IMG/VR virus record: IMGVR_UViG_3300042350_004528
Span: 186,001 to 250,000 of that record
Reading direction: 5' to 3' (one strand)
Length of the DNA stretch: 64,000 nucleotides
Under the pieces are notes generated by a model that ran no database searches, was not told the origin of the DNA, and saw only the letters and a program-made list of their open reading frames with translations. Within the stretch, counting starts at the first letter, position 1. Each line of letters opens with the position of its first letter. Position numbers and translations under genes: made by a program. This document shows positions 2,405 through 27,435 of the stretch, one piece after another.

Positions 2405-2518
2405 TGTTTGTTTGTTTTGATAGTTCAAAGATAAACGAAATAAATTTAACTTGCAAATTTTAACATAAAAAAAGGGTAAATTTCTTTACCCCCTTTTCAA
2501 ACATTATGAACAACAAAT

Positions 2519-2746
2519 TTATTTTATCTTTTCCGCGAAATAGTTTACAACATCGGGAATGTGTTTTTTGTAGTACGGCTGATTTTCCATGCACCACTTT
2601 TTAACCTCTTCTTTTGTTGTGAAACCTTTGTTACCCCAACTTGAAGCGTTTGATTGAATTTGATTGAATGTTGGCTCCAAGTCGTTGATGAAGTCGCGAA
2701 CTGTCCAACCCTCCCAAATGTGTTTGTCTAAATTTACTTTTGCCAT
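2519..2746 (-). CDS. Hypothetical protein, 75 aa
   Basis: Start corrected to MAKVN. Confidence 0.82.
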   Translation of the reverse strand: MAKVNLDKHIWEGWTVRDFINDLEPTFNQIQSNASSWGNKGFTTKEEVKKWCMENQPYYKKHIPDVVNYFAEKIK

Positions 2747-2830
2747 TGTTTGTTTGATTTGTTGATGCAAAGATAAATGAAATAAATTTAACTTGCAAAT
2801 AAAAAGGGGAATTTCTTCCCCTTTCTTTTT

Positions 2831-3019
2831 TTAGTTATAAGCATCGCAAGTGTGGTGCTTGTGTCTTTCAGGTTTAATCGGTGCATAGTGTGTTTTGTAC
2901 GCATCGCACTGAACATACTTTGTGCGTTTTTTATGTTTCTTTAACTTGATACCATCGTTTGCAAAACTTGTTCCCGTTGCCATAACTGAAACCAACAATA
3001 AAATAAATAACTTTTTCAT
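2831..3019 (-). CDS. Small secreted basic protein with two CDAY motifs, 62 aa
   Basis: Signal peptide ending TSFA; QCDAYK and TCDAYN. Confidence 0.75.
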   Translation of the reverse strand: MKKLFILLLVSVMATGTSFANDGIKLKKHKKRTKYVQCDAYKTHYAPIKPERHKHHTCDAYN

Positions 3020-3132
3020 AGGGTTTGTTTTTGATTATGATGTAAAAGTATATAGATTAAATTTAATGTGCAAATTTTTTGCAAAAAAAAAGGAAGAAAT
3101 TTCTTTCTTCCAATTTTCGTATCAAATCAAAC

Positions 3133-3510
3133 TTAATCTTTCGTTACTTGCATTGTCTTTTCAAGCAACAATATTCGTGGTACAATGTACTCAACATATT
3201 CGGGTGTAAGTTGTTTGTTGTATATCTCCATAACAAAATCAACCGAAGGTGTTGCACCATAGAATGTTCCCAGCAAAACATTTGTTTCTTTGTGTCTTAT
3301 CTCGGTGTAACTTTCCTTTGTGGTTTTCGCCACTTTAATATCAAAGACACAACAAAATTCGGGGTCGGACTGCAAAGCGTTTAGTTTGGCTATATCCGTT
3401 TCGTTTGTGTAGTGAACCTCCAAAACAAGTTTGGGCTCTTTCGGGTTTGTACTCGCTTTAACTCCAACAAAGGTAGTTAAGCAAATGAGTGTTAAAAGTA
3501 TTTGTTTCAT
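3133..3510 (-). CDS. Secreted hypothetical protein, 125 aa
   Basis: Signal peptide ending VKA; ATG 4 nt after -7 box. Confidence 0.8.
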   Translation of the reverse strand: MKQILLTLICLTTFVGVKASTNPKEPKLVLEVHYTNETDIAKLNALQSDPEFCCVFDIKVAKTTKESYTEIRHKETNVLLGTFYGATPSVDFVMEIYNKQLTPEYVEYIVPRILLLEKTMQVTKD

Positions 3511-3546
3511 ACTACAAATATAAACATTTTATTTTTAATATGCAAA

Positions 3547-3699
3547 TTAAACTCTCCCCTCAATGATTGCCGCGAACCAAAGTGATGCGTAAAGAAACGC
3601 AGACATAAAAATCATAAAGGCGACTGAACCATAAAACTCTTTCGGATCTTCCTTGCGAAAATCATTCAGCGTGATGAACATTTCTTTAATATCTTTCAT
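3547..3699 (-). CDS. Small membrane protein, 50 aa
   Basis: Manual translation MKDIKEMF..YGSVAFMIFMSAFLYASLWFAAIIEGRV; own promoter. Confidence 0.72.
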   Translation of the reverse strand: MKDIKEMFITLNDFRKEDPKEFYGSVAFMIFMSAFLYASLWFAAIIEGRV

Positions 3700-3761
3700 T
3701 GTTTGTTTGTTTTTGTTGATACAAAGATAAGTGAAATAAATTTAACTTGCAAATTTTAATT

Positions 3762-3922
3762 CAAAAAAAGGGGAAATTTCTTTCCCCAATTAAATGCATT
3801 TTGCCTTTTTCTGTTTATTGACGGATTACAAAAGACAAACGTCATCCGTTCTCACCCACCTTATAAATCCTTCCCGTGCACGAAACAAGAAACTGGGGCG
3901 GGATTGTTTCTACTTGTTATTT
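3762..3922 (-). ncRNA. Putative small RNA 3 (~160 nt)
   Basis: Array promoter 3927-3958 and terminator ~3762-3790 bracket a GC-richer segment with no ORF at a normal start position; helices AAUCC/GGAUU and ACGGAU/AUCCGU. Confidence 0.5.
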
Positions 3923-3962
3923 AATACAAAGATAAACGAAATAAATTTAATGTGCAAATTTT

Positions 3963-4160
3963 TTACCAAGTGAAATCATTTTTATTCGCATTCAAAGAAA
4001 GGAATAAAATGAATAGAAACAATAAACCTGTTCCGAAGAAGAATGCAAACTCTTCGTTCTTGATGTAACCCTTTGATTGCAGGGCAAGTCCAACGCTTAC
4101 TCCAATGGTTATCAAACCAAGGATTGAAAGCACGAATGGGATAACTTTAACTTTTTTCAT
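3963..4160 (-). CDS. Two-TM membrane protein, 65 aa
   Basis: Start corrected to MKKVK; two hydrophobic helices. Confidence 0.78.
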   Translation of the reverse strand: MKKVKVIPFVLSILGLITIGVSVGLALQSKGYIKNEEFAFFFGTGLLFLFILFLSLNANKNDFTW

Positions 4161-4200
4161 ATTTTTTTGTTTTGATAGTTCAAAGATAAACGAAATAAAT

Positions 4201-4344
4201 TTAACTTGCAAACTTTTGTTTAAGTTTTTTTCGGTTATATGTTTTACCCGAAGGTTTGCTCCTTGTTATCATATTCCTACGAATGATTTGAGCAATGTGT
4301 CTTTCTGACAAACCTTGTTTCCAATCTTGTGTTTCGTTTTTCAT
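4201..4344 (-). CDS. Small basic protein, 47 aa
   Basis: Manual translation MKNETQDW..KLKQKFAS; stop lies inside the next promoter. Confidence 0.68.
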   Translation of the reverse strand: MKNETQDWKQGLSERHIAQIIRRNMITRSKPSGKTYNRKKLKQKFAS

Positions 4345-4382
4345 AACACAAAGATAAATGAAATAAATTTAATGTGCAAATT

Positions 4383-4724
4383 TTATTCTGCAAAATTATC
4401 TTTACCACATTCAGGACAAACTTTTTCCTCATACAAAGTATGGTCTTGTGGATTATGTTCGTTGTCAACCATTACCGATTTCAACTCATCCTTACCACCA
4501 ATCCAACCACAATTTTCGCAATAAAGGTCGTATTCAATTTCAATAACCTCATCAAAAATTTCCTTGTATTCAGTAACCAATTCTTTATCGGTGAAATTCG
4601 CATACCCTTTCATCCCGTATTCAAATATACTGGCAACATAACTATTGTCACCTCGTTCGTGTTCCGATATGATTGTGTTGATGTCGTTATCTACCAACTT
4701 GTCTATGATTTCCTGTCTTTTCAT
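4383..4724 (-). CDS. Hypothetical protein with C-terminal Zn ribbon, 113 aa
   Basis: CENC..CPEC. Confidence 0.8.
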   Translation of the reverse strand: MKRQEIIDKLVDNDINTIISEHERGDNSYVASIFEYGMKGYANFTDKELVTEYKEIFDEVIEIEYDLYCENCGWIGGKDELKSVMVDNEHNPQDHTLYEEKVCPECGKDNFAE

Positions 4725-4751
4725 AACTTAAAAGTTTTTCTTATATTGTAC

Positions 4752-4802
4752 TCATCGCCAACCTTGTTTAACTATTACGTTCTTTCTACCTTGCTTTCGC
4801 CA
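4752..4802 (-). pseudogene. Start-less remnant of the 3' end of a paralogue of 16275..16508
   Basis: WRKQGRKNVIVKQGWR* versus WIKQGKKNVIIKQGWQ*. Confidence 0.7.
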
Positions 4803-4806
4803 TATT

Positions 4807-4917
4807 TTAGTTATATCGTTGTTTACAAATCACCCAAATGCTATAAAGAATAAGTGGTGAAAAAAGAATTAATTGCCCCAAACAAACCATTCTTTGTCTT
4901 GCTGTTAATCTTTTCAT
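4807..4917 (-). CDS. 36-aa membrane peptide
   Basis: MKRLTARQRMVCLGQLILFSPLILYSIWVICKQRYN; ATG 4 nt after variant -7 box TATCTTTA. Confidence 0.6.
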   Translation of the reverse strand: MKRLTARQRMVCLGQLILFSPLILYSIWVICKQRYN

Positions 4918-4941
4918 AGTTTAAAGATAAGTTAAATAAAT

Positions 4942-5106
4942 TTAACTTGCAAACTTTGTTTCAATTTTTTTATCCCCAACAAAGTTATACCCAGAGTTAA
5001 ACCACCATAGGGCCAAACGGATTGACCAGTAAATGCTTCGTTTTTGTTTCCTTCCATTCAGATAGCATTCCCACGCTTTCCGAATTCTAAACTTGTTTAT
5101 TCGCAT
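4942..5106 (-). CDS. Hypothetical protein, 54 aa
   Basis: Manual translation MRINKF..ETKFAS; overlaps stop of upstream gene. Confidence 0.6.
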   Translation of the reverse strand: MRINKFRIRKAWECYLNGRKQKRSIYWSIRLALWWFNSGYNFVGDKKIETKFAS

Positions 5107-5315
5107 AATTCAACCTCAATGATTTCACAATAGTTTTCCAACTCGTCTAACGGAATTCTACCATAGTTCGTTGATGAATAGTAACCTTGAAACTCGTAAC
5201 GCTTCTTCCATTCAGTTAAGGCGTTCTTTGCTTCCTCAACACTATTGTAAGTGTCGCTGAAATGAATGCTAAACCCATCGGGACTTAACACATCGTATTG
5301 CTTGTTTGATTTCAT
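5097..5315 (-). CDS. Hypothetical protein, 72 aa
   Basis: ORF with array promoter. Confidence 0.82.
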   Translation of the reverse strand: MKSNKQYDVLSPDGFSIHFSDTYNSVEEAKNALTEWKKRYEFQGYYSSTNYGRIPLDELENYCEIIEVELCE

Positions 5316-5418
5316 AGTTCAAAGATAAGTGAAATAAATTTAACTTGCAAATTTTAATACAAAAAAAAGGGGCAGATTTCTCCGCCCACCTTTTTCAAAT
5401 ATGAAAACAAATCAAGTT

Positions 5419-5793
5419 CTATGAAAAGTAAGGTTGTATAACCTCTTTGTCGCTCAAATTAGCTCTCATCTTTGCATACGCTTCCGCTTCTTTATCATCT
5501 TTGTTATAGATGAAATCAACATTGCTTGAAGCGATTGCAAATTGTCCGTTCGCAATACCCCAAAAGTAATAACGAACATTGTCATTCACATCAACTGCAT
5601 TCAATGCCCTCTCGCAAACCTCGTTCAGTTCGGGGAATAACTTAACGCTTCCCGTGATACTTGAAACGATTGCAAGTTTCATACTGCCGTTGGCGAATTC
5701 ATCAGCTACCTTGTTCTCACCAATGTTTCTTAAACCCTCAATAAGGATTTGTTTGTAGCTACCCGAAGGTGCTTTTGGAAATGGATTGTTCAT
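5419..5793 (-). CDS. Hypothetical protein, 124 aa
   Basis: ORF, promoter, terminator. Confidence 0.85.
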   Translation of the reverse strand: MNNPFPKAPSGSYKQILIEGLRNIGENKVADEFANGSMKLAIVSSITGSVKLFPELNEVCERALNAVDVNDNVRYYFWGIANGQFAIASSNVDFIYNKDDKEAEAYAKMRANLSDKEVIQPYFS

Positions 5794-5835
5794 ATCGTTT
5801 TGTTTTTTGATACAGCAAAGATAAGTGTAATAAAT

Positions 5836-6006
5836 TTAACTCGCAAGTATTTTTTTAATTTCTTTTAATCGATCCAAAACTTTATCCATTTCTTTTGAAA
5901 TCTTTGTGTGGGTTCTATGTTTGCTATTAGGTTCCCACAACTCGGACAAAGTTTTATATCGTTCTTTGAGCCGTATCTCCTCAACAATCAATACCGAATG
6001 TTCCAT
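5836..6006 (-). CDS. Hypothetical protein, 56 aa
   Basis: Start corrected to MEHS; ends ILAS inside next promoter. Confidence 0.72.
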   Translation of the reverse strand: MEHSVLIVEEIRLKERYKTLSELWEPNSKHRTHTKISKEMDKVLDRLKEIKKILAS

Positions 6007-6008
6007 TG

Positions 6009-6212
6009 TTAATTCAGTATTGATTGGTAAGGGATTGGAAATTCCAAGAAAGGTGCGGACAACCATTTGTCAATTTTGATTGTCTTGTCGGTAATCTTTT
6101 CCTTTCGGTAAACCTTTACGCAAGTTTCCAAGTTTTCATCAGCGAATATGGTTTCGGTGCTTTCATCATCATTTGTGCGAAATACCTCGTACCAAGTTTT
6201 TGTGTTTTCCAT
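6009..6212 (-). CDS. Hypothetical protein, 67 aa
   Basis: ORF with array promoter. Confidence 0.78.
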   Translation of the reverse strand: MENTKTWYEVFRTNDDESTETIFADENLETCVKVYRKEKITDKTIKIDKWLSAPFLEFPIPYQSILN

Positions 6213-6285
6213 TTTTTCTTTTTCCTAATTTTGTGAGTGCAAAGGTATATATAATAAATTTAACTCACAAGTTTTCAACACATTT

Positions 6286-6606
6286 TTACCAAGTTTTTGG
6301 ATATTTGTCCAATGTTTCTTGCGGATATAAAACTTCGTTTCCGTTGTTCAAAACATCTTCCCACCAACGAATACCAATCTGCAATCGTGGTACTGCGAAC
6401 TTCATAACATCTTCATCGTGGACACGAAAGAACAAATCGTTTCTTCCACCTGTTCCCTCTTCGCCAGGTGTTGGCAAAGTTAAAACTTCTTCGCAATAAA
6501 CTCCGCGAACATTAAACTCTTCTTTGAGCCAATTTTCAAAATCTTTGGCACAACTCTTTCCAACAATTGTTCCGTGCCAAACACATACTTGATTAAAATT
6601 TTCCAT
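6286..6606 (-). CDS. Hypothetical protein, 106 aa
   Basis: Start corrected to MENFN; GGRNDLFF motif. Confidence 0.85.
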   Translation of the reverse strand: MENFNQVCVWHGTIVGKSCAKDFENWLKEEFNVRGVYCEEVLTLPTPGEEGTGGRNDLFFRVHDEDVMKFAVPRLQIGIRWWEDVLNNGNEVLYPQETLDKYPKTW

Positions 6607-6694
6607 TTGTTTTGTTTTTGATATAACAAAAATAAATGAAATAAATTTAATGTGCAAATAAAAAGGGGAATTTCTTCCCCTTTCTTATCCACAA

Positions 6695-7099
6695 TTAGCG
6701 GTCAAAATATGTTTCTTTGATACCTTGTTTCTTTTCCATTGACTGCGACATAAGGTACATTGTTTCCCCCATTGGTTTATCGTGGTGAGAAATAACAACT
6801 TCAATGATACCCTTGTTGTCGGTCGGGTGAAACAACATTGTAAACTCCCCAGTGTTCGGTGCAAGTTTACGGATTAAAGTTTCTGCACTATCCGTTTCAA
6901 ATTCGGTGTACCCTGCAACATTTCTCCAAGTCAAAGAAAGTCCGTAACAAAAGAATTTCTTTGTACGCATTTTCTTCATCATTGTTTTTACTTCGTACAC
7001 AAAATCTTCCCAATAGATTTGTGCTTCCATTTCATCTTCAACTTCGGGCATATCCCAACCCGCTAAAATTCTTTTTGTTTCTTTGATTAAAGTTTCCAT
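6695..7099 (-). CDS. Hypothetical protein, 134 aa
   Basis: Start corrected to METLI; SHHDKPMGE motif. Confidence 0.85.
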   Translation of the reverse strand: METLIKETKRILAGWDMPEVEDEMEAQIYWEDFVYEVKTMMKKMRTKKFFCYGLSLTWRNVAGYTEFETDSAETLIRKLAPNTGEFTMLFHPTDNKGIIEVVISHHDKPMGETMYLMSQSMEKKQGIKETYFDR

Positions 7100-7210
7100 T
7101 TGCTTGTTTGTTTTTGTTGATACAAATATAAATGAAATAAATTTAACTTGCAAATTTTAACACAAAAAAAAAGGGCGGATTTCTCCACCCCTTTTTTCAA
7201 TCGGAAAGAA

Positions 7211-7567
7211 TTAAAGTTTATAGAATGTTATGACACACTTATTTTTTTTGTTGTCAATATCGGGTGCTGAACTATTATATTTACTACCCTTTGGTTGCCA
7301 CCTTTCATAATAATAGTTTATGTAGTTTTTAACCAACTCAATATCACTTTCTGCCAAATGCTTTGTGAATGTAGCAACTAATGTTCCGTTACTTGCGTTC
7401 CTTGAAATTGTCATTTCTTCGGAAATGTTTGTTGGCAAAGTAAGTTTGTTTTGTGCTAACTTTGAGCAAGTTTCAAGGGTGTCAACAACATCAACCTTGT
7501 TGGTTGTTTGTGCTTTTGCGGTTGTTACTCCGAACAACACAACTGCGATAAAGAATACTTTTTTCAT
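7211..7567 (-). CDS. Secreted hypothetical protein, 118 aa
   Basis: Signal peptide ending AKA-Q (Bacteroidota Q rule). Confidence 0.82.
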   Translation of the reverse strand: MKKVFFIAVVLFGVTTAKAQTTNKVDVVDTLETCSKLAQNKLTLPTNISEEMTISRNASNGTLVATFTKHLAESDIELVKNYINYYYERWQPKGSKYNSSAPDIDNKKNKCVITFYKL

Positions 7568-7629
7568 CTTGTTTATTTTTGATTATGATACAAAGATAAA
7601 TGAAATAAATTTAACTTGCAAATTTTACC

Positions 7630-7905
7630 TCAAAAATCTTCGGTTGAAAAATCAATGTTAAGTTCGCTAACCATTTGTATTGTTTCAAACTCCGTTTTAA
7701 GTTCATTAACTTCTTCGTTGATAAGACACATCTCAAAGTCCAGTGCGTGTACTTTCATAAGACAAAGAATAGGGTGTATGTGCCCGTTCTCCAACTTAAA
7801 CATCAATGTTGTTTTCTCACCCAAAATTTCTGTTGCTCGGTCATTAAACTTAACCAACTTACTCTTTAGCTCCATTAAACGAATGTCCGTTTGCTTGATT
7901 GCCAT
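7630..7905 (-). CDS. Hypothetical protein, 91 aa
   Basis: Start corrected to MAIKQ. Confidence 0.8.
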   Translation of the reverse strand: MAIKQTDIRLMELKSKLVKFNDRATEILGEKTTLMFKLENGHIHPILCLMKVHALDFEMCLINEEVNELKTEFETIQMVSELNIDFSTEDF

Positions 7906-8045
7906 TTTGTTTGTTTTTGTTGATACAAAGATAAATGAAATAAATTTAACTTGCAAATTTCAGGGATCTAAGTTATCCACATTGTTATAAACAAAAAAGG
8001 GTGGGGATTTCCCCCACCCAATCATCAAATAAACAAACAAGCAAT

Positions 8046-8285
8046 TTAACAAATCAATGATACTTCCATACTTTGAAGTTTTTTGATAAACTTCTCTTCA
8101 TCGGTATCAACCATAAGTTTAATTGTTGGATTGATACTTTGGGCATAACCCCATTTTTGTTTTACCGCCTCAAAGTAATTTCTTGCGGTTTTCAGTTGCA
8201 AAAAGTTGTTACAACTGCTCAACACTTTGAATGCCCTTTCTCGGTCATCGTGGTAATCTTTTGCGAAGTCGGTTACTTTTAACAT
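8046..8285 (-). CDS. Hypothetical protein, 79 aa
   Basis: Start corrected to MLKV. Confidence 0.8.
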   Translation of the reverse strand: MLKVTDFAKDYHDDRERAFKVLSSCNNFLQLKTARNYFEAVKQKWGYAQSINPTIKLMVDTDEEKFIKKLQSMEVSLIC

Positions 8286-13171: not shown

Positions 13172-13294
13172 ATTGTTTTGTTTTTTGATATTGCAAATGT
13201 AAGTGTAATAAATTTAACTCGCAAATTTTAACACAAAAAAAGGGGGAAATTTCTTTCCACCCTCTTTTCTTTATCAAATAAACAAACAAAATCC

Positions 13295-13564
13295 TCAATC
13301 CCAAATTCGTGTAACTTGTTGGCTGAATGGGTTGTACTCAACTTGTTTACCCATTTTCCAATCCCCTTTGTCCACTAACAAGGTTTTGTGTTCGTTACTC
13401 CACGCACCATTCGGTTTTTCGTGTTTCAGTTCACTATCCTCTTTGACAAGGACTTCGGGGAAATCGGTTTTCTCTTGCAAGTCCATAGCGAAATTGCCAT
13501 AGAGTGTGTGTTGGTTTGTTCCCTCGCCCACCAACAAAGTGTGCTTTGTTAAACTCTTTTTCAT
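13295..13564 (-). CDS. Small His-containing protein of the type that partners DUF6745-like proteins, 89 aa
   Basis: GEGTNQH..LKHE..EH..QVEYNP..RIWD. Confidence 0.65.
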   Translation of the reverse strand: MKKSLTKHTLLVGEGTNQHTLYGNFAMDLQEKTDFPEVLVKEDSELKHEKPNGAWSNEHKTLLVDKGDWKMGKQVEYNPFSQQVTRIWD

Positions 13565-15280: not shown

Positions 15281-15452
15281 AAAGAATTATTTTTTGTTTT
15301 TGATTGGTGCAAATATGAGTGTAATTTTTTTAACTCGCAAATTTTATCACAAAAAAATTTAAAAAACTTTTCAAACCTGGTGGATCCATAAAAAGAAAGG
15401 GGCAATGTTTCCACCGCCCCCTATTGTTGTAATCAAAAAACGCAACAATATA

Positions 15453-16058
15453 TTATTCTGTAAGGTCAAAAATGAACTCTGTATATCCTTTCGGTATTCT
15501 ATTTCCAACCGAAATTGAATGACGAGCCCAAACTCCAACCTGCCCTCTTTCATCCCCTCTAAAATCTCCACCGCCTCGCCCGTTGCCCTCGCAAGTTAGC
15601 AAAGGTAAAGGGTGAATTGTGAACGGCCACTTTTTCCCGTTCTTATCTTCCCAATAATCGCTAACGGGTACTTTTGTTTTATCAACATACTGCTTTTTGG
15701 TATGGTTGATAATGTACTGATACCTTGAACGATTAACACGGGTAGGTGCGAGCTCGTTATCATCATCGCAAAGGTCGTAAAGATTAACCTCTCTAACTTT
15801 CCCCTCTTCGTCTTGGTGAGTTAAACCTTTTTCCCCGTCTGCATAATCACCAGCCCAAACTACACGGGCTTTGTTAAACTTTCCTCTCGGTGATAACAAC
15901 TTTTCAAAAGTGTTCACAAAATCGTTACGCATCCACGAGTGCTCCATAAGTTTGAGCCCGTTGTTGTACTTGTGTGAATACATCCACCCTAAGACCGTTT
16001 CTTTTTCATCATCGCCCGTCTTTTCAGCGAGAATACAAGGTTTGTAATACTGTCCCAT
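15453..16058 (-). CDS. Phage hypothetical protein, 201 aa
   Basis: MGQYY, GLKLMEHSW, HPLPLLTCEGNGRGGGD. Confidence 0.85.
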   Translation of the reverse strand: MGQYYKPCILAEKTGDDEKETVLGWMYSHKYNNGLKLMEHSWMRNDFVNTFEKLLSPRGKFNKARVVWAGDYADGEKGLTHQDEEGKVREVNLYDLCDDDNELAPTRVNRSRYQYIINHTKKQYVDKTKVPVSDYWEDKNGKKWPFTIHPLPLLTCEGNGRGGGDFRGDERGQVGVWARHSISVGNRIPKGYTEFIFDLTE

Positions 16059-18460: not shown

Positions 18461-18557
18461 CAAATATAAGTGTGATAAATTTAACTTGCAAATTTTACTG
18501 TAAAAAAAATTTTTTTGTAAAAAAGTTTGCGGGTTAAAAATATTGTATGTACATTTG
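18461..18557. promoter_or_regulatory. Back-to-back array promoters at the main strand switch
   Basis: - promoter ~18461-18492 and + promoter 18526-18557. Confidence 0.85.
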
Positions 18558-18785: not shown

Positions 18786-18791
18786 CGCAAC

Positions 18792-19955: not shown

Positions 19956-20258
19956 ATGACAAACTATACTGATTTCAATGAAGAGGTTGGCAAGATTCGG
20001 GTGAGGCTAGCCCAACAAACCGAAGCTTTACTTAAGCCCGCGATTCCGCCAGCCATTTACAACTGCAAGAACGAAGGCATTGCCATATCGACAGCAGAAG
20101 GTACGATGAAAGTTGAAACCATTGGTTACGACAACGGCGGAGTATTCGTTAAAACCGAAACAGGTGAGGTATGGGATTACATGGATTTGGACACTGATGA
20201 TATGGTCGCGATTTACGAGCATGTTTGGTACCAAATTAATTCCGCACCTATGAGGTGA
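19956..20258 (+). CDS. Hypothetical protein, 100 aa
   Basis: Start corrected to MTNYT. Confidence 0.8.
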   Translation: MTNYTDFNEEVGKIRVRLAQQTEALLKPAIPPAIYNCKNEGIAISTAEGTMKVETIGYDNGGVFVKTETGEVWDYMDLDTDDMVAIYEHVWYQINSAPMR

Positions 20259-20405
20259 GTCTTTGTGTGATGTTTTGTTTTGATGATGAAGAGGAGACCT
20301 AGTGTCTCCTTTTCTGATTATACCAGGATCAACAGCAAAAAAAGTTGATTTCAGATTTGCACATTAAATTTAATTCATTTATATTTGCATTCAAAACAAA
20401 ACGAA

Positions 20406-20875: not shown

Positions 20876-21160
20876 ATGTCAAAGCCCACAGCAAAAGAAA
20901 CGGTAGAAACCGTAACCAATTACCTGAACAGTTTCTCGAGCAAAGAGAAGGAATTCATTGAGGAAATGAACAGGGAACATCGCACACTTCAACAGTCATT
21001 CACAAAACTATGTCTGGCATGGCTTGAGAACTGCGCCAATGAAGAATATCGTTTTGATGGAAGGAATGAAGCGAGTCACACTGTATCGAAGGAACTCGTT
21101 GAGAACTTCAAGTGGAACAAGGATGGTTTCAAACCATCTGAATTCTTACCCTGTATATAA
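20876..21160 (+). CDS. Hypothetical protein, 94 aa
   Basis: EHRTLQQSF..DGRNEAS. Confidence 0.85.
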   Translation: MSKPTAKETVETVTNYLNSFSSKEKEFIEEMNREHRTLQQSFTKLCLAWLENCANEEYRFDGRNEASHTVSKELVENFKWNKDGFKPSEFLPCI

Positions 21161-21193
21161 AAAAAAGAGGGGACTTTTACATCCCCTCATTTT

Positions 21194-21364
21194 TTATTGT
21201 ACCGAGTCTGTGGTTGTGGAAACATTCGTAGTGTCTACGCTTGTGGTATCGGTAACAACAGCGGTTGAGTCCGTAGCTGTTGTTGACTCGGTGGATTCCG
21301 ATCCGCAAGATACAACTGTCAACATTGAAGCGACAATTGCAAGTGTCATGAGAATTCTTTTCAT
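21194..21364 (-). CDS. Short Thr/Ser/Asp-rich lipoprotein, 56 aa
   Basis: Lipobox VVSC; four D-(S/T)-(T/V) sequons. Confidence 0.8.
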   Translation of the reverse strand: MKRILMTLAIVASMLTVVSCGSESTESTTATDSTAVVTDTTSVDTTNVSTTTDSVQ

Positions 21365-21470: not shown

Positions 21471-21815
21471 ATGAAATATAAACAGCAAGCTCCAATTGAT
21501 GATTGGTCAGACATCGACAAGTGCATCAAGAATTCTGAAATCAACCTGAAACATTTACAGGACATTGACAAAGCTCAGGAAGCCAAAGGTGAACCCTTAC
21601 TTTACCGTTACTTTTACAGGCCTGTCGCTGACGGTCGAGCTTGGTATCAGGTGACGAAGGTTACATCTAGAACAGCTACCGTCACATGGTGCGCAGGGAT
21701 TTGTCTTGACGACTATGTTGATATGATGTTGGGTGAGGAAGCTACGATATCTCGCGGCATGATTGAGAACATGGTGAATGGAAGAATTGCACTTGAAAAA
21801 TTATTTGCACATTAA
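21471..21815 (+). CDS. Hypothetical protein, 114 aa
   Basis: PVADGRAWYQV; ends LFAH. Confidence 0.83.
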   Translation: MKYKQQAPIDDWSDIDKCIKNSEINLKHLQDIDKAQEAKGEPLLYRYFYRPVADGRAWYQVTKVTSRTATVTWCAGICLDDYVDMMLGEEATISRGMIENMVNGRIALEKLFAH

Positions 21816-21860
21816 ATTTTTTCCATTTATATTTGTATTCATAAATCAAAAACAAAATAT

Positions 21861-22484: not shown

Positions 22485-22572
22485 TATTCCTCTTATCATT
22501 CCACAAAGGGGAGGTTTTTAAAATCTCCCTTTTTTTTTATCACATTTGTAAAATCAATTAATAACAGAGCAT

Positions 22573-22680
22573 ATGTCTAAGTCAGTAAAAGTAAAAATCA
22601 CGAAGAGTACATTCAAGTATGTAAGCAAACCAACAACTAAACAGGGCCGTGTGCCAAAACCCTCATCCAAAAAAAGATAG
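22573..22680 (+). CDS. 35-aa Lys-rich peptide
   Basis: MSKSVKVKITKSTFKYVSKPTTKQGRVPKPSSKKR. Confidence 0.55.
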   Translation: MSKSVKVKITKSTFKYVSKPTTKQGRVPKPSSKKR

Positions 22681-22740
22681 ATTCACATTTGCAAGTTAAA
22701 AAAATTATACTTATCTTTGTCCCAATCAAAACAAAATAAT

Positions 22741-22995
22741 ATGGAACTTTTAGTTGGAACCAACCTTGAGGTTATGAGTAGGACAATTTACATCGCCGTT
22801 GATGTACAATTTGACAAGAACGGTGAAACCTACGAGGCTAATCTCACCTGTTGTTTATCGGAAGATATAAACATTGGATTTGATTCCTGGGATATCACAA
22901 TTGCAAACGAGGAAGAACTTCCTGAGTTAACGGCGGAAGAAACTGAGCAACTTAAAGAATTTGCAAAAAAATATGCCCAAGTACTTGCAAATTAA
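22741..22995 (+). CDS. Hypothetical protein, 84 aa
   Basis: Start corrected to MELLV; ends VLAN. Confidence 0.8.
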   Translation: MELLVGTNLEVMSRTIYIAVDVQFDKNGETYEANLTCCLSEDINIGFDSWDITIANEEELPELTAEETEQLKEFAKKYAQVLAN

Positions 22996-23034
22996 ATTTA
23001 TTACACTTATATTTGTAACCTAAATCAAAACAAT

Positions 23035-23649
23035 ATGTCAAAAGTATTCAAAGTAACTTCAGGTACAATGGTGTGTTCCGACCCTTGTTACGAAATCCCG
23101 ACTTGGTGTCAGGGTATCGTGAGTAATGTGAAAAACGGAAATTGGGAAGCGGGTATTGAAACTTCCGATGAAGGCTCTTGGGGTGAGCGTATCGCTCGTC
23201 TTTGGGTTTACAACTTGGAAGCGGCTATCAAAGACCCAAGTATAGTTAAAGCCATTGAGAATGGTGGTGGACACGAAATGCCTTTCAGTGCGGGTGTTGA
23301 TAGTGGTCAGTTCGGTTTCTTCGACCACGCCAACTATCGCAAAGATGATAGTGCGAAAGATTTACCACAATACGACTTCGGTGGTGACTTTGGAATGGGT
23401 ACTAACGAGGGTGATGCTTGGTATGGTGCTTGTTGTCATTTAACACTTGGTGAAGAAAATTGGGGTGTCCTACCAAATGGTGTTGTTTCTTCTTCAGGAT
23501 ATGGTGATGGCTCTTATGCAGTCACAGGTATCAAGAACGATGAGGGTGAGTATGTTGCGTTCTGCATTGTCTTTATCGGTAACGATGATGAGGAGGATAA
23601 CGATGATTTGGATTGGGGTGATTGGAACGAAACTACCGATGAGGATTAA
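23035..23649 (+). CDS. DUF4241-like protein
   Basis: SDPCY, GVDSGQ, SSGYGDGSY. Confidence 0.72.
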   Translation: MSKVFKVTSGTMVCSDPCYEIPTWCQGIVSNVKNGNWEAGIETSDEGSWGERIARLWVYNLEAAIKDPSIVKAIENGGGHEMPFSAGVDSGQFGFFDHANYRKDDSAKDLPQYDFGGDFGMGTNEGDAWYGACCHLTLGEENWGVLPNGVVSSSGYGDGSYAVTGIKNDEGEYVAFCIVFIGNDDEEDNDDLDWGDWNETTDED

Positions 23650-23763
23650 ATTGGGTTTTTAGGTTGGAGCCTCCTGATCAATTCAGGGGGCTTTTTTTTT
23701 CTTAAAAAATTTGCATATTAAATTTATTTCATTTATCTTTGCATTCATAAAATCAAAAACAAA

Positions 23764-24342
23764 ATGAATATTTTACCAAAATCAATTACTGACCGAGTGT
23801 CAATCAAGAATGTGAAAGAAAACTTCGGACACGACTTGGGTGGTTTCTTCTGCGACATCTACTTCGACAACAAGAAAGTAGGTTACCTGAACAATGATGG
23901 TTGGGGTGGTTGCCCTGACATTCGTACCTATGGTTTCGATGCAAAGCACAAAGCGATGATGAAATCATTTGAGGACTTCCTGACCGAGCAGAACTTCGCC
24001 CAGTTTGTTGCTGATGATTACAACAAACCGCACCCGCAAATGCCCAATGGTAAGAATGATTGGGTTGCTGATGATTTCAGGTTTGACAGCCAAGTTGAAT
24101 TCCTTTGTGAACGCCTGAACTTTATGAAAAGTATTGAACGCCAAACAAAGAAAGCAATCCTTTATGGTAACCCTCGTTCAACCAATTACAAGATAGTATC
24201 TTGGAAAGGTGCAAAGACACTTGAAGATGTTGTGAAGAGTATCGGTAATGCTCGTTTCAAGGTTGTTGTTGATGGTATCAAAGCCAAACTTGTTGAGGGG
24301 GAAATGATTTACAACACAAACCTCGAAAAGTTTTTGCAATAA
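23764..24342 (+). CDS. Hypothetical protein, 192 aa
   Basis: NDGWGG motif. Confidence 0.87.
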   Translation: MNILPKSITDRVSIKNVKENFGHDLGGFFCDIYFDNKKVGYLNNDGWGGCPDIRTYGFDAKHKAMMKSFEDFLTEQNFAQFVADDYNKPHPQMPNGKNDWVADDFRFDSQVEFLCERLNFMKSIERQTKKAILYGNPRSTNYKIVSWKGAKTLEDVVKSIGNARFKVVVDGIKAKLVEGEMIYNTNLEKFLQ

Positions 24343-24398
24343 AATTTGCACATTAAATTTATTTCACTTATCTTTGTACCAACAAAATCAAAAAACAT

Positions 24399-25016
24399 AT
24401 GGGATATTCAACCGATTTCTTTGGCTCATTGTCTTTGAGCCGACCAGCGACCATCGTAGAGAAGAACTACTTGGATAAACTCGCTGACACTCGCAGAATG
24501 AAACGCGATGTTAACAAACTCATGGAACTCTACAAAGGGGAACATGGCAATCCATTTGCTAAAGACAAGAACAACCCTGACGATATCTATGGTTTCAAAG
24601 GGGAATACTTTGTTGGGGCAGATGGTTTCAAGGGTCAGAATGGCGATGATAGTGTTATCGACCACAACAGCGCCAGTGGCGAGATTGGATGGGGAGAATA
24701 CAAAGGCGATTGGGTTTTGCGTGATAAATTACAAACCGAACTCAACGCTGATAAAATCAAACAGCCAGGTCTTTGGTTGCAATGGGTGCTTAACGAGGAT
24801 GGTACTGAACTATCATGGGATGGTAACGAAAAGTTTTACCACTACACCGAATGGTTGCAGTATCTTATCGCCCATTTCTTTGAGCCATGGGGTATCAAAC
24901 TCAATGGCGAGATTGAATGGGTTGGCGAGGACAGCAATGACCGAGGAAAGATTGTTGTGTCCGACAACCATGTTGAAATTCTTGACGCTGTTATAGGATA
25001 TCAGAAGAGGGGTTAA
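24399..25016 (+). CDS. Phage hypothetical protein, 205 aa
   Basis: MGYSTDF, QPGLWLQW, WDGNEKFY. Confidence 0.87.
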   Translation: MGYSTDFFGSLSLSRPATIVEKNYLDKLADTRRMKRDVNKLMELYKGEHGNPFAKDKNNPDDIYGFKGEYFVGADGFKGQNGDDSVIDHNSASGEIGWGEYKGDWVLRDKLQTELNADKIKQPGLWLQWVLNEDGTELSWDGNEKFYHYTEWLQYLIAHFFEPWGIKLNGEIEWVGEDSNDRGKIVVSDNHVEILDAVIGYQKRG

Positions 25017-25123
25017 TCCCCTCTTTTCCTGAATTCTGGATCGGATCAAAAAAAAATGTAAAAAAGTTTGCGTATTAAATTTATTCCACTTATCTTTGTA
25101 TCATAATTAAAAACCAAAATAAA

Positions 25124-25936
25124 ATGTACGAACTCGAAAAAATCAAAGAACTTGCACCTGCGGCTTTCCGTATGCCTGAAGACGGTGCTCAGGACGGTGT
25201 GTCAAAGCACTACCAATTCATGACCACCGCTGAAATCATTGACGGTCTTGGTGGAATGGGTTGGGATGTTCACTCGGCTATGCAACAAAAGTCGAAGAAG
25301 AACCCTGAAACCACAAAGCACATGTTGCGCTTCCGTAATGACAACTACGGTTCACTGGGTGTTAAGGGGAATGTTCCTGAAATCCTGTTAGTGAATTCTC
25401 ACGACCGCACAACCTCATTGAACTTTCATGTGGGTATCTTCCGCATCATCTGTTCGAACGGCTTGGTGGTTGCTGATGAAACATTCAACAAGTTCCGTAT
25501 TCGTCACATGGGTACAACATTCGATGAGGTTAAGGGATTAATCAACAACATCACTGAGAACCTACCAACTGTGTTCAATACAATCAACCGCTTCGAGGGT
25601 GTGATTATGAGTGAGGAGGCACAAACCGAGTTCGCTATGCGAGCATTCGCTATCCGCTTCCCTGAGTACATCAACCCAAAGACAAACGCTTTGGACACCA
25701 AGAAAGTAATGAAGAATGTATCAGTTGATGAAATCCTGAAAGCAGTTCGTCCTGAGGACAATGGCCCTGACTTGTGGAGAGTTTACAACCGAGTTCAGGA
25801 GAAACTCATCAAGGGTGGCTTCCAACATCAAGGCGAGGGGCAGAAGCCTCGTGCTTCACGCCCTATCAGCAACATTCGTATGAATGTCCTGATTAACAAA
25901 GGCCTGTGGAACTTGGCGGAGGAGTTCGCTAACTAA
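25124..25936 (+). CDS. DUF932/DUF945 family protein
   Basis: KHMLRFR, NSHD, GIFRIICSNG, LWRVYNRVQE. Confidence 0.85.
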   Translation: MYELEKIKELAPAAFRMPEDGAQDGVSKHYQFMTTAEIIDGLGGMGWDVHSAMQQKSKKNPETTKHMLRFRNDNYGSLGVKGNVPEILLVNSHDRTTSLNFHVGIFRIICSNGLVVADETFNKFRIRHMGTTFDEVKGLINNITENLPTVFNTINRFEGVIMSEEAQTEFAMRAFAIRFPEYINPKTNALDTKKVMKNVSVDEILKAVRPEDNGPDLWRVYNRVQEKLIKGGFQHQGEGQKPRASRPISNIRMNVLINKGLWNLAEEFAN

Positions 25937-26037
25937 CTCACAATACACTTGAAAGAAAGGGGGAAGAAATTCCCTCTTTTTTTTTGCACATTAAATTTAA
26001 TTTACTTATCTTTGTTATCGAAATCAAAAACAATAAT

Positions 26038-26607
26038 ATGAAGTTACTTAATTTTGTGATGGTCGCCAAACACCTGACAGGTGACAGCGAAGTTTATTTC
26101 TTTCCTACAAAGGAGGAAGCAAGAACATTCTACAACAACAGAGTTAAACCGCTGTTGGATATTTGTATGAAGAACGAATTGGAGGAAGATGAGGCGTACT
26201 CATTCGGACAAACCAAAGATTGTGTTCGTTTCGATTGTGGTTACGATGAGGAACTTGATGCGATGCTTAACGAGTGTAATCATTACTATCGTGTGGACAG
26301 CGTTGAAGTTCCTGAAAATGTTACACACTATGTGGCTGACTTTTCCGAGTGGGTTGATGAGAGTGTTATCGAGTTCCACACCGAACAACAGGCAAAGGAA
26401 GTTTGGAACGATAAGATTGATGAGGAAATCAGGTTGGCTTCCGAGTATCATGGGATTGAGATTAGCAGACATCACCAAGAAACTTGGGAAGATAAATCAG
26501 GTATGACCTTGTTTCAGGAAACACATTACAGCGATATGTATTCCGATGCTTACTTTGGTCATTCAATGGATATGACTTGGACATTCAGGATTGGACAAAT
26601 AAATTAA
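26038..26607 (+). CDS. Hypothetical protein, 189 aa
   Basis: Start corrected to MKLLN. Confidence 0.83.
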   Translation: MKLLNFVMVAKHLTGDSEVYFFPTKEEARTFYNNRVKPLLDICMKNELEEDEAYSFGQTKDCVRFDCGYDEELDAMLNECNHYYRVDSVEVPENVTHYVADFSEWVDESVIEFHTEQQAKEVWNDKIDEEIRLASEYHGIEISRHHQETWEDKSGMTLFQETHYSDMYSDAYFGHSMDMTWTFRIGQIN

Positions 26608-26611
26608 TCTT

Positions 26612-26839
26612 ATGGCGATAAAAATCATTTACTACTCGGAGGTTATAGATAACTGGGGTAGAACAGAAAGTTCAATGAAAGGTGATATCATCTTCGCGGC
26701 CCTGAACAATGTTGAGGACTGGACTGACGATATGATGTTCGAGGGTGATGACGGTCGCAAGTATTCAATAGATGAGCTTGCAGGTAAAGAAGTTTGTGTA
26801 CCAGACATCGGGATATTCACCGTACCAGAAGAAGAATAA
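26612..26839 (+). CDS. Hypothetical protein, 75 aa
   Basis: ORF track. Confidence 0.78.
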   Translation: MAIKIIYYSEVIDNWGRTESSMKGDIIFAALNNVEDWTDDMMFEGDDGRKYSIDELAGKEVCVPDIGIFTVPEEE

Positions 26840-26896
26840 TTAACGGGGCTTAAAAGCCCCTTTATTTTTTTATCTGGGACGTTATATTTATCATGG

Positions 26897-27379
26897 ATGG
26901 TGAAGTCCCAGATTTTAAATGAGAGATCTTTTGATATAACAGACGGTGAACGATATTTAATTGTCGTGATCACCCCAGATAGATCGTACTCAGTTTTCAC
27001 CAGAAAGTACCAGAGCAAACCAGTTGTCTCTGTGGAATTCAAAGAAGCAAAACTTTATAAGGAGCTGAAGACAGCTCAGAATGTTGTGAAGGAAATCTTC
27101 CAGAACAATGAACACTACCAGGAATCTGTAATAAAGATATTCCAGGTGAAGGATCTATTCGAACCCAGATATTTTGTACAGTATATTAAAAAAGCTTACA
27201 TGAATTCTCCTGAGCTTAAGTGTTACATCGACTGGTACGTGATCGGCGAGAACCAGGTTGATACTTATCTGGATTACAGCGAAGCTCAAAAACATCTGGA
27301 CAAATACAAACGCGATCTACTTGAATTCTATTACAGCCAGATCATGAACATCAGGAGCTTCGACTTAAAAAAAATATAA
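26897..27379 (+). CDS. Hypothetical protein, 160 aa
   Basis: Preceded by TATTTAT rather than the array promoter. Confidence 0.8.
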   Translation: MVKSQILNERSFDITDGERYLIVVITPDRSYSVFTRKYQSKPVVSVEFKEAKLYKELKTAQNVVKEIFQNNEHYQESVIKIFQVKDLFEPRYFVQYIKKAYMNSPELKCYIDWYVIGENQVDTYLDYSEAQKHLDKYKRDLLEFYYSQIMNIRSFDLKKI

Positions 27380-27435
27380 AAAAAAACGGCTCCATTTCTG
27401 GAACCGTCTCTTCACCACTAAATCAAAAACAAAAA

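What the first reader, a model, noticed from the sequence alone, without database searches (positions are those of the whole stretch)
2491..27435. 3' UTRs repeatedly carry reverse-complement copies of the translation-initiation leader
Seen: between stop codon and terminator, several transcripts contain U-rich tracts whose complement reads like a leader or start. Examples: ATCATCAAATAAACAAACAA (~8021-8040), ATCAAATAAACAAACAAAA (~13273-13291), AATCAAAAAACGCAACAA (~15430-15448), CATCATCAAAACAAAACA (- strand ~20272-20289), AAATCAAAAACAAAAA (~27420-27435), CAAATATGAAAACAAATC (~5396-5413) and CAAACATTATGAACAACAAA (~2498-2517). Inference: either 5'-3' panhandles that gate translation in cis, or 3'-UTR-derived anti-leader sRNAs forming a family with sRNA 4, or scars of inverted cassettes.
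Basis: partly seen in the sequence, partly recalled or inferred. Interest (0 to 1): 0.7.

Follow-up and report, generated by a model that had tools for sequence, protein, structure and literature searches.

The report
Anti-leader tracts in phage early 3'UTRs
In the early-gene region of an uncultured 299-kb freshwater phage, about a third of the terminated early genes carry, between stop codon and terminator hairpin, a U/G-rich tract that is the reverse complement of the A/C-rich leader shared by the early genes; the enrichment is real and recurs in related phages, but what the tract does is still inferred.

Summary
Observation confirmed. All seven cited tracts, plus an eighth at 3112-3132, lie on the transcribed strand between a stop codon and a GC hairpin with a T run.

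The window is part of a complete 299-kb virus record. Its first 27 kb hold about 70 short ORFan genes. About 50 of them follow a near-identical Bacteroidota-type promoter, usually with an A/C-rich, SD-less leader of about 20 nt.

- Enrichment: anti-leader 7-mers reach 129/kb in early stop-to-hairpin spacers. Coding sequence has about 6/kb and other 3'UTRs of the genome 3.5/kb.
- By spacer: 7 of 27 spacers have three or more hits, against 0.2-0.4 expected (0 of 5000 samples).
- Controls: forward-orientation words are not enriched, and no non-terminated early gene has a tract.
- Replication: the pattern recurs in related viral contigs, including at non-orthologous genes.

Interpretation partly supported. 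The tracts can pair with the leader family at -14 to -22 kcal/mol. The gene's own leader is not a preferred partner, three of eight tract mRNAs have no normal leader, no covariation was found, and the RNA data are uninformative.

Best reading: an RNA-level anti-leader acting on the shared leader in trans or on read-through transcripts. A simple own-mRNA panhandle is less likely and inverted-cassette scars are unlikely.

The parts
2496..2518 (-). Anti-leader tract, the 3'UTR of gene 2519-2746: ATTTGTTGTTCATAATGTTTGAA
   Evidence: its own leader is the best partner here (-9.6 kcal/mol)
3112..3132 (-). Anti-leader tract, the 3'UTR of the leaderless gene 3133-3510: GTTTGATTTGATACGAAAATT.
   Evidence: (best partner -16.1 kcal/mol); ortholog in L030 keeps GTTTGTTGATTTGATA
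5394..5418 (-). Anti-leader tract, the 3'UTR of gene 5419-5793 (stop TAG): AACTTGATTTGTTTTCATATTTGAA
8020..8045 (-). Anti-leader tract, the 3'UTR of gene 8046-8285: ATTGCTTGTTTGTTTATTTGATGATT. It shares an identical 17-mer, TTGTTTGTTTATTTGAT, with the tract at 13267-13294.
   Evidence: (best partner -21.6 kcal/mol, the leader of gene 6695-7099)
13267..13294 (-). Anti-leader tract, the 3'UTR of gene 13295-13564 (stop TGA): GGATTTTGTTTGTTTATTTGATAAAGAA
   Evidence: pairs with the next gene's leader in the read-through fold, 15.9 bp against 7.8 in shuffles, p=0.02
15423..15452 (-). Anti-leader tract, the 3'UTR of gene 15453-16058. A local stem ATTGTTG/CAACAAT displays CGUUUUUUGAUUA in its loop.
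   Evidence: best partner -20.0 kcal/mol; stem and loop kept in a 79%-identical relative
20259..20292 (+). Anti-leader tract, the 3'UTR of gene 19956-20258 (stop TGA): GTCTTTGTGTGATGTTTTGTTTTGATGATGAAGA
   Evidence: -21.2 kcal/mol; 14-nt core TGTTTTGTTTTGAT identical in relatives whose CDS ends barely align
27413..27435 (-). Anti-leader tract, the 3'UTR of a two-gene leaderless operon (27680-27913 and 27436-27687, stop TGA): TTTTTGTTTTTGATTTAGTGGTG. There is no same-strand gene downstream.
   Evidence: (-19.0 kcal/mol)
7999..8019 (-). Example terminator hairpin directly 3' of a tract (GGGTGGGGGAAATCCCCACCC plus a T run). The equivalent hairpins are at 2470-2495, 3092-3111, 5364-5393, 13238-13266, 15397-15422 and 27381-27412 (all -), and at 20293-20309 (+).
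7906..7958 (-). Example of the shared early promoter and leader: ATTTGCAAGTTAA (-33 TTTG), TTATCTTTG (-7 TAnnTTTG), then leader TATCAACAAAAACAAACAAA before the ATG at 7905. About 50 such cassettes lie in window 1-30000.
   Evidence: (33 matches against 0.5 expected)

Best explanation
The tracts are RNA-level 'anti-leader' elements. They are single-stranded U/G-rich sequences, carried on a subset of early transcripts directly 5' of the intrinsic terminator hairpin, and they are complementary to the A/C-rich, SD-less leader that nearly all early genes of this phage share.

In Bacteroidota, initiation depends on an unstructured A-rich leader (PMC6847099). Pairing with the tract should therefore occlude the leader and lower translation, and possibly the stability, of early mRNAs.

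The tract matches the family consensus rather than its own gene's leader. The most likely partners are therefore other early leaders in trans, either from the intact mRNA 3' end or from a terminator-protected decay fragment. A second candidate is the next gene's leader on transcripts that read through the terminator.

Shown: position, orientation, enrichment, complementarity, and recurrence in relatives. Inferred: that pairing occurs in vivo, which partner is used, and any effect on translation.
For: - Position is strictly transcribed, untranslated and upstream of the hairpin. 8 of 27 terminated early genes have a tract; 0 of 42 non-terminated ones do.
- Enrichment is about 20-fold over every other compartment. 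Orientation is uniformly 'anti': no window spacer has 3 or more forward words.
- The same words are depleted in the first 30 nt of early CDS (1.2/kb).
- The complement covers the whole leader in register, including TTTGAT (reverse complement of ATCAAA) next to the hairpin.
- Duplex energies with the best leaders are -14 to -22 kcal/mol. Means are -7 to -13, z = -4.5 to -9.5 against shuffles. The spacers score like true leader complements.
- Generic rather than cognate matching: own-leader percentile rank averages 0.64, and 3 of 8 tract mRNAs lack a normal leader.
- Relatives at about 79% identity keep the T/G plus TTGAT character at 4 of 4 orthologous spacers even where the hairpin is replaced. 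Three further tracts sit at non-orthologous genes.
- Lineage 3 tracts pair better with lineage 3 leaders (-9.0 against -7.4 and -7.6), though n=3.
- Read-through folds pair the tract with the next leader in 4 of 7 cases.
- Elsewhere, long-range anti-RBS words inhibit translation and are depleted from genes (PMC12697547). Enrichment here therefore runs against the usual trend.
Against: - There is no direct RNA evidence. The only RNA runs give sparse 150-200-nt contigs with no 3'-end information.
- No covariation between tract and any specific leader was found.
- Tract identity between orthologs is not higher than that of the flanking CDS: 0.50 against 0.83, 0.70 against 0.76, 0.35 against 0.39, and 0.62 against 0.53.
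- Tracts are gained and lost between lineages, and in one relative the tract is translated as the last codons of the gene.
- Only about 30% of terminated early genes have a tract here, and about 15% in relatives.
- Both sequences are low-complexity, so much of the predicted pairing comes from composition. Shuffled tracts still give 3-7 bp with the leader.
- Bacteroidota lack Hfq, so efficient trans pairing is not assured (own knowledge).
Confidence: 0.35

Rival explanations
1. Own-mRNA 5'-3' panhandle. The tract pairs with the leader of the same transcript once transcription is complete. Translation would then be limited to a co-transcriptional pulse, or both ends would be protected. This is the icaR or hok fbi type.
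For: - Full-length folds pair leader and tract in the MFE structure of all 5 leadered tract mRNAs: 7-12 expected bp against 3-7 for shuffled tracts.
- Leader unpaired probability is 0.47, against 0.79 in 11 tract-less early mRNAs (Mann-Whitney p=2e-4).
- Adding the 3'UTR lowers accessibility by 0.18, against 0.02 in tract-less mRNAs.
- In two mRNAs with no or a very short leader, the MFE fold pairs the tract with the 5'-terminal AUG region.
Against: - The own leader is a worse-than-average partner: percentile ranks are 0.65, 0.98, 0.83, 0.74, 0.02, 0.40, 0.36, 0.86 and 0.90.
- Own-leader duplexes are only -5 to -13 kcal/mol, while other leaders reach -17 to -22.
- Three of eight tract mRNAs are leaderless or have a 5-nt leader. 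In those, pairing does not exceed shuffles, and in the 27436 operon it is absent.
- Ortholog swaps show no covariation.
Confidence: 0.2
2. No selected function. The tracts would be by-products of how these spacers evolve. Candidate processes are slippage of (TTTG)n-like low-complexity DNA, recombination between shuffling terminator-promoter cassettes, and selection only against leader-like (sense) or hairpin-competing sequence in the spacer.
For: - Tracts turn over. They are present or absent among orthologs, and in L007/L008 the tract is coded as ...NCLFIC*.
- Chimeric cassettes suggest crossovers inside tracts.
- Ortholog identity is not above that of the CDS.
- The number of spacers with at least one hit is no greater than in dinucleotide shuffles.
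- Only a minority of cassettes have a tract.
Against: - The 34 other terminated 3'UTRs of the same AT-rich genome show background density, 3.5/kb.
- Word order exceeds dinucleotide shuffles, p=0.0018.
- The specific TTGAT signature sits at a consistent place in all 15 distinct tracts (8 in the window, 7 in relatives); in the window's 2519 tract it is degenerate (TTTGAA).
- Independent tracts occur at non-orthologous genes in three lineages.
- A 14-nt core is identical where the neighbouring CDS is unalignable.
Confidence: 0.2
3. A binding site rather than a pairing element. One version is an RNA-binding or double-stranded-DNA-binding phage or host protein that recognises the ATCAAAA/TTTTGAT motif, acting as an operator or roadblock near early promoters. 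Another is that the A/C-rich, G-poor opposite strand serves as a Rho-loading site that stops antisense transcription.
For: - The conserved ATCAAAA core in leaders sits at a variable distance from both the -7 box and the ATG. That suggests sequence-specific recognition beyond mere A-richness.
- The tract lies about 45-70 bp upstream of the next -33 box.
- The opposite strand of each tract is C>G and unstructured, which is inference only.
Against: - Orientation is strictly 'anti' relative to transcription, which a double-stranded-DNA site does not require.
- No candidate binding protein was identified. The tract-bearing genes are ORFans.
- The 27413-27435 tract has no downstream promoter.
Confidence: 0.15
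4. Scars of inverted cassettes. The tracts would be remnants of leaders of genes that once ran on the opposite strand.
For: - The early region has two divergent arms (switch near 18,500), so inverted leader copies exist in the genome.
- Two tracts contain an ATG when read on the opposite strand.
Against: - No reverse-complement promoter, -7 box or ORF accompanies any tract. The hairpin abuts the tract directly.
- Creating each tract this way would need two precise replacements, and that would have had to happen at least 11 times in three lineages.
- Opposite-strand ORFs after the tracts are 7-30 codons long (read from the sequence).
Confidence: 0.05

Closest known systems
icaR mRNA 5'-3' UTR pairing in Staphylococcus aureus (PMC3868564); also the hbs 5'/3'-UTR interaction in B. 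subtilis (PMC5737220)
   Same: A short motif in the 3'UTR, upstream of the terminator, is complementary to the translation initiation region and is expected to block initiation.
   Different: In icaR the motif is an anti-SD that pairs with its own mRNA, and this is shown experimentally with RNase III. Here there is no SD, the target is an A/C-rich leader shared by about 40 genes, the own leader is not preferred, and nothing has been tested in vivo.
3'UTR-derived sRNAs of enterobacteria such as CpxQ, SroC and MicL (own knowledge)
   Same: The architecture is the same: a single-stranded seed directly 5' of the mRNA's intrinsic terminator hairpin and U tail, able to pair with translation initiation regions in trans.
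   Different: Those sRNAs depend on Hfq and RNase E and have specific targets. Here the host phylum lacks Hfq, the 'targets' would be a whole family of phage early leaders, and no processed fragment has been observed.
Phage T4 read-through occlusion of ribosome binding sites (genes e, soc, I-TevI) and lambda sib retroregulation (own knowledge)
   Same: An arm complementary to the initiation region lies upstream of the gene's own promoter. Only transcripts coming from upstream contain both arms. In 6 of 8 sites here the tract lies upstream of the next early promoter.
   Different: In T4 the stem is local and separates early from late expression. Here the arms are about 90-130 nt apart, enclose a terminator and a promoter of the same class, and are predicted to pair in only 4 of 7 cases.
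PeSL (promoter-early stem-loop) mobile regulatory cassettes of T4-type phages (PMC2839356, PMC4122927)
   Same: The context matches: an ORFan-rich early region in which a conserved strong host-type promoter is combined with a GGGG...CCCC stem-loop between nearly every pair of genes. There are signs of cassette exchange between relatives.
   Different: PeSLs are sigma-70/SD cassettes in coliphages, and no inverted copy of the leader is described as part of them. Here the promoter is the Bacteroidota -33/-7 type with an SD-less leader, and the anti-leader is an optional extra on the 5' side of the stem-loop.
Long-range anti-SD-like sequences in B. subtilis mRNAs (PMC12697547)
   Same: Sequences complementary to the ribosome binding site, hundreds of nt away on the same mRNA, pair with it, inhibit initiation and promote decay.
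   Different: In that work such sequences are depleted from genes. Here the equivalent words are about 20-fold enriched at one defined place.

Membership tests
icaR-type 5'-3' UTR pairing (cis) | The 3'UTR motif is complementary to the initiation region of the same mRNA | tested here: inconclusive
   Pairing is predicted in 5 of 5 leadered mRNAs, with accessibility 0.47 against 0.79. Against that, the own leader ranks below average (mean 0.64) and 3 of 8 mRNAs lack a normal leader.
icaR-type 5'-3' UTR pairing (cis) | Pairing lowers translation and/or triggers RNase III cleavage | not testable with these tools
   The phage is uncultured, and the RNA runs hold only sparse contigs.
3'UTR-derived sRNA | A single-stranded seed immediately upstream of the mRNA's intrinsic terminator | tested here: met
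   All 8 tracts end 0-12 nt before a GC hairpin with a T run. The tracts are T/G-rich and cannot self-pair, except at 15423-15452, where the core sits in a loop.
3'UTR-derived sRNA | Complementarity to initiation regions of target mRNAs | tested here: met
   The best leader partners reach -14 to -22 kcal/mol, z = -4.5 to -9.5 against shuffles.
3'UTR-derived sRNA | A stable processed 3' fragment accumulates | not testable with these tools
   Metatranscriptome contigs do not cover the tracts or hairpins.
T4-type read-through occlusion stem | The upstream arm lies outside the transcript made from the gene's own promoter, and the downstream arm is its initiation region | tested here: inconclusive
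   The geometry is met at 6 of 8 sites: at 5394-5418 the next gene is leaderless, and 27413-27435 has no next gene. The MFE fold pairs tract and next leader in 4 of 7 cases, above shuffles only at 13267-13294 (p=0.02) and 20259-20292 (p=0.08). The downstream leader's mean rank is 0.39, not significant.
PeSL-type regulatory cassette (context, not the tract itself) | A repeated composite of a strong early host-type promoter and a stem-loop terminator between ORFans | tested here: met
   The promoter core has 33 matches against 0.5 expected, concentrated in window 1-24,000. GC hairpins lie directly upstream. The flanked genes have no Pfam hits.
PeSL-type regulatory cassette (context, not the tract itself) | Recombination between cassettes shuffles genes (indels between relatives, mini-circles) | tested here: inconclusive
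   Chimeric tract and hairpin combinations occur between the 79-aa and 89-aa gene cassettes of the window and lineage 2. Mini-circles are not testable.

The most novel reading that the evidence does not exclude
A Bacteroidota jumbo phage regulates its whole early gene class through RNA. Optional anti-leader modules, embedded in the 3'UTRs of some early transcripts, act on the one leader shared by about 40 early genes. They would work as terminator-protected fragments or on read-through RNA, giving a self-limiting shut-off of early translation. This would be an RNA counterpart, in an SD-less host, of T4's leader-directed RegB/RegA shut-off, and the first anti-'Kozak-like-leader' element described in bacteria or phages.
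Probability: 0.25. Interest if true: 0.7.

Novelty: new variant of a known kind. Interest (0 to 1): 0.5.

Why it matters
Bacteroidota do not use Shine-Dalgarno pairing, so almost nothing is known about how translation initiation is repressed by RNA in this phylum or its phages. This region offers a defined, recurrent element: a 15-30-nt complement of a family-wide leader, placed at a fixed position in early transcripts of a jumbo phage lineage. If it works by pairing, it would show that 3'UTR anti-RBS logic (icaR, long-range anti-SD) extends to SD-less leaders, and that a phage can address a whole temporal class of mRNAs through one shared leader. Even if the tracts prove non-functional, the region is a clear Bacteroidota analogue of T4 PeSL cassettes. 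It has about 50 near-identical promoters, a well-defined start site and nine leaderless genes, which makes it useful for promoter and leader studies.

Tried and rejected
- Megablast of 8 kb against GenBank phages found nothing. The only protein-level relative is the uncultured 642-kb phage record LR756502.1.
- Rfam and ARAGORN found only tRNA-Met at 52065-52139.
- RNA evidence: two lake metatranscriptomes hold pieces of the phage, but only as 150-200-nt unstranded contigs. No ends, processing or read-through could be read, and DNA carry-over cannot be excluded.
- The metagenome scan used a loose promoter pattern.
- Cognate specificity: ranks of the own and the downstream leader among all leaders were not significant.
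- Ortholog swap covariation: none.
- Conservation above the flanking CDS: not found for whole tracts.
- Family link to dedicated sRNAs: the two promoter-driven non-coding stretches (about 495-400 and 3925-3769, minus strand) have only -6 kcal/mol mean pairing with leaders.
- The DnaA-box idea for TGTGGATAA in spacers: 3 matches against 1.1 expected, not significant.
- The hydrophobic C-terminal coding remnant idea: the last 30 nt of early CDS show only 9.7/kb anti-leader words.

Full report
**What the region is.** The window is bases 186,001-250,000 of a single 298,833-bp virus record with 34% GC. CheckV rates it 100% complete, and it encodes a terminase. It also encodes NAMPT, PRPP synthetase, an RNA ligase and a tRNA-Met. 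Its only GenBank relative at protein level is an uncultured 642-kb phage. Lake and freshwater metatranscriptomes hold pieces of it.

Window 1-27,400 is an early-type, ORFan-rich region of about 70 short genes. Genes run on the minus strand up to about 18,500 and on the plus strand after that. About 50 of them are preceded by a nearly identical cassette:
- `aaaATTTGCAAGTTAAatttatttcacTTATCTTTG`, with a -33 TTTG and a -7 TAnnTTTG, the Bacteroidota promoter type;
- then an A/C-rich leader without a Shine-Dalgarno sequence, typically `TATCAACAAAAACAAACAAA`, before the ATG.

The promoter core occurs 33 times against 0.5 expected, and 35 copies in the whole genome cluster at 180-210 kb. Nine genes have exactly 4 nt between the -7 box and the ATG. 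They are therefore leaderless, which places the transcription start at the fifth base after TTTG. Many cassettes are preceded by the upstream gene's GC hairpin and T run. Overall this is a Bacteroidota counterpart of the PeSL promoter/stem-loop cassettes of T4-type phages (PMC2839356).

**The observation.** Each lies on the transcribed strand between a stop codon and a terminator hairpin. I found an eighth at 3112-3132. The tracts are 21-34 nt, T/G-rich, and read as full-length leader complements. The leader's commonest word, ATCAAA (31 of 42 leaders), appears as TTTGAT 0-12 nt before the hairpin. The start-codon-proximal end of the leader complement abuts the stop codon. Two tracts, at 8020-8045 and 13267-13294, share an identical 17-mer.

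**Is it more than chance?** Yes.
- Reverse complements of 7-mers found in at least 5 leaders give 41 hits in 317 positions of early stop-to-hairpin spacers, or 129/kb.
- The same words give 5.6 and 6.1/kb in coding sequence, 3.5/kb in the 34 terminated 3'UTRs elsewhere in this genome, and 1.2/kb in the first 30 nt of early genes.
- Forward leader words are not enriched: 2 hits.
- Shuffling each spacer gives 10.7 +/- 4.6 hits (mononucleotide) and 22.0 +/- 5.7 hits (dinucleotide, p=0.0018).
- Seven of 27 spacers have 3 or more hits, against 0.16-0.43 expected from length-matched coding samples (0 of 5000). None of 42 early genes without a terminator has a tract (p=8e-4).
- In an energy scan of both strands of window 1-30500, four of the five best anti-leader windows that lie on a gene's sense strand are these spacers. 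They score in the same range as the true antisense strands of leaders.
- Caveat: the count of spacers with at least one hit does not exceed dinucleotide shuffles of the same spacers. T/G-rich composition itself carries part of the signal.

**Relatives.** Promoter-pattern scans of viral contigs gave 53 loci. Among the first 30, those that aligned to the genome were about 90-94% or 76-83% identical; 3 did not align, and the identity of the other 23 loci was not measured.
- Among cassettes not identical to the window, anti-leader words reach 120/kb against 4.6/kb in CDS, and 8 of 44 cassettes carry a tract.
- Four tracts sit at positions orthologous to window tracts and keep the T/G plus TTGAT character. 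One does so although the hairpin is replaced. Another keeps a 14-nt core, TGTTTTGTTTTGAT, identical while the adjacent CDS ends barely align.
- Three tracts sit behind other genes, of 119, 186/187 and 217 aa.
- There is also turnover. The window's 218-aa gene lacks the tract that lineage 3 has. In L007/L008 the homologue of the 8020-8045 tract is translated as the last codons of the 79-aa gene.
- Whole-tract identity between orthologs is not above that of the flanking CDS.

**Mechanism tests.**
1. *Pairing potential.* Each tract pairs with the leader family at a mean of -7 to -13 kcal/mol (z = -4.5 to -9.5) and with its best partners at -14 to -22.
2. *Own-mRNA panhandle.*
   - For: full-length folds pair leader and tract in all five leadered tract mRNAs. 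Leader accessibility is 0.47, against 0.79 in 11 tract-less early mRNAs (p=2e-4).
   - Against: the own leader is a below-average partner (percentile rank mean 0.64, n=9). Three of eight tract mRNAs have no leader or a 5-nt one: 3133-3510, 19956-20258 and the 27913-27436 operon. Swapping orthologous leaders and tracts shows no covariation.
3. *Read-through occlusion of the next gene's leader.* The tract and the next leader pair in the MFE fold in 4 of 7 cases. The pairing exceeds shuffles at 13267-13294 (p=0.02) and marginally at 20259-20292 (p=0.08). The downstream leader's mean rank is 0.39, not significant. One tract has no downstream gene.
4. *Trans action.* This is compatible with every tract and with the consensus-like sequence. 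At 15423-15452 a conserved local stem presents the core in a loop. No RNA data can show fragments.
5. *Lineage effect.* Lineage 3 tracts pair somewhat better with lineage 3 leaders, but n=3.
6. *Scars.* No reverse-complement promoter or ORF accompanies any tract.

**Verdict on mechanism.** The best-supported reading is an RNA-level anti-leader that addresses the shared early leader generically, either in trans or on read-through transcripts. In an SD-less host, where an unstructured A-rich leader drives initiation (PMC6847099), this should damp early translation. I put this at about 0.35. A strict own-mRNA panhandle gets about 0.2, a non-selected by-product of spacer and cassette evolution about 0.2, a protein-binding or Rho-loading site about 0.15, and inverted-cassette scars about 0.05. 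All functional steps are inferred. Only position, orientation, enrichment, complementarity and recurrence are shown.

**Comparison with known systems.** The nearest functional precedents are:
- icaR 5'-3' UTR pairing (PMC3868564);
- long-range anti-SD sequences (PMC12697547);
- 3'UTR-derived sRNAs, and T4 read-through occlusion stems (both from my own knowledge).

The context matches PeSL cassettes (PMC2839356). The tracts differ from all of these in three ways. They target an SD-less leader common to a whole gene class. They are an optional module at a fixed place beside the terminator. They are not matched to their own gene. I rate this a new variant of a known kind, of moderate interest, limited by the lack of any expression data and by the phage being uncultured.

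Noticed in passing
window 1-30000, e.g. 3510, 5315, 8960, 16860, 19091 (ATG positions): Nine early genes have exactly 4 nt between the -7 box (TTTG) and the ATG. They are therefore leaderless mRNAs, which fixes the transcription start at the fifth base after the -7 box for the whole promoter family.
   Followed up: partly
window 3925-3769 (- strand): The early promoter at 3959 drives about 165 nt without an ORF, ending in the terminator at 3787-3769. The stretch is 100% conserved in close relatives. The deepest RNA-library contig laid on the window (depth 19, 94% identical) falls on 3802-3900. This is a likely abundant small RNA.
   Followed up: partly
window 495-400 (- strand): The early promoter at 535 is followed by about 100 nt of structured, non-coding sequence (MFE -27.7 kcal/mol for 129 nt) before the next promoter. 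It is conserved in relatives and is a second candidate small RNA.
   Followed up: partly
stop codons at 13295-13297, 20256-20258, 27436-27438 (TGA) and 5419-5421 (TAG): Four of the eight tract-bearing genes end in TGA or TAG. Only 2 of about 54 other terminated genes in the genome do, in a strongly TAA-biased genome. The reason is unexplained; it may simply reflect the local T/G richness.
   Followed up: no
window 27436-27913 (- strand): The gene before the 27413-27435 tract probably starts at GTG 27687, overlapping the stop of gene 27680-27913. It encodes a small lipoprotein with signal peptide ...LVTGC. The two genes form a leaderless operon.
   Followed up: partly
L007 3409-3648 and L008 1803-2042, compared with window 8020-8066: In 80%-identical relatives the homologue of the 8020-8045 tract is translated (...NCLFIC*). 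The window copy has an 18-nt insertion that carries a TAA upstream of it. The tract therefore straddles the boundary between coding and non-coding sequence across lineages.
   Followed up: partly
window 21163-21192 and 27381-27412: Two hairpins serve convergent gene pairs as bidirectional terminators, with an A run on one side and a T run on the other. The pairs are 20876-21160(+) with 21194-21349(-), and 26897-27379(+) with 27436-27687(-).
   Followed up: no
window 1300-1365 and 2120-2190 (- strand): Very small hydrophobic ORFs of about 21 aa (MSILFVLTLFCGALLIMAVLM, MGLLIALILVAIGSFVSNKLD) sit inside cassettes, the first with its own promoter and leader. They are candidate membrane micro-peptides.
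   Followed up: no
window 6685-6693 and 7973-7981; also the hairpin just upstream of the window start (ATGTTATCCACATCACAAGTGTGGATAACTT): Perfect DnaA-box sequences (TTATCCACA) lie in early-region spacers, and an inverted pair of them forms a terminator-like hairpin. The count in the window is not significant: 3 against 1.1 expected.
   Followed up: yes
first 30 nt of early CDS, window 1-30000: The 5' coding ends of early genes continue the A/C-rich leader style. Forward leader words reach 35.6/kb against 11/kb mid-gene, and the words complementary to the leader are depleted (1.2/kb). This is consistent with selection for an unstructured initiation region.
   Followed up: yes
genome G000:C1:139608-155558 (outside the window): A single ORF of 5,316 codons lies on the minus strand of the phage genome.
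   Followed up: no
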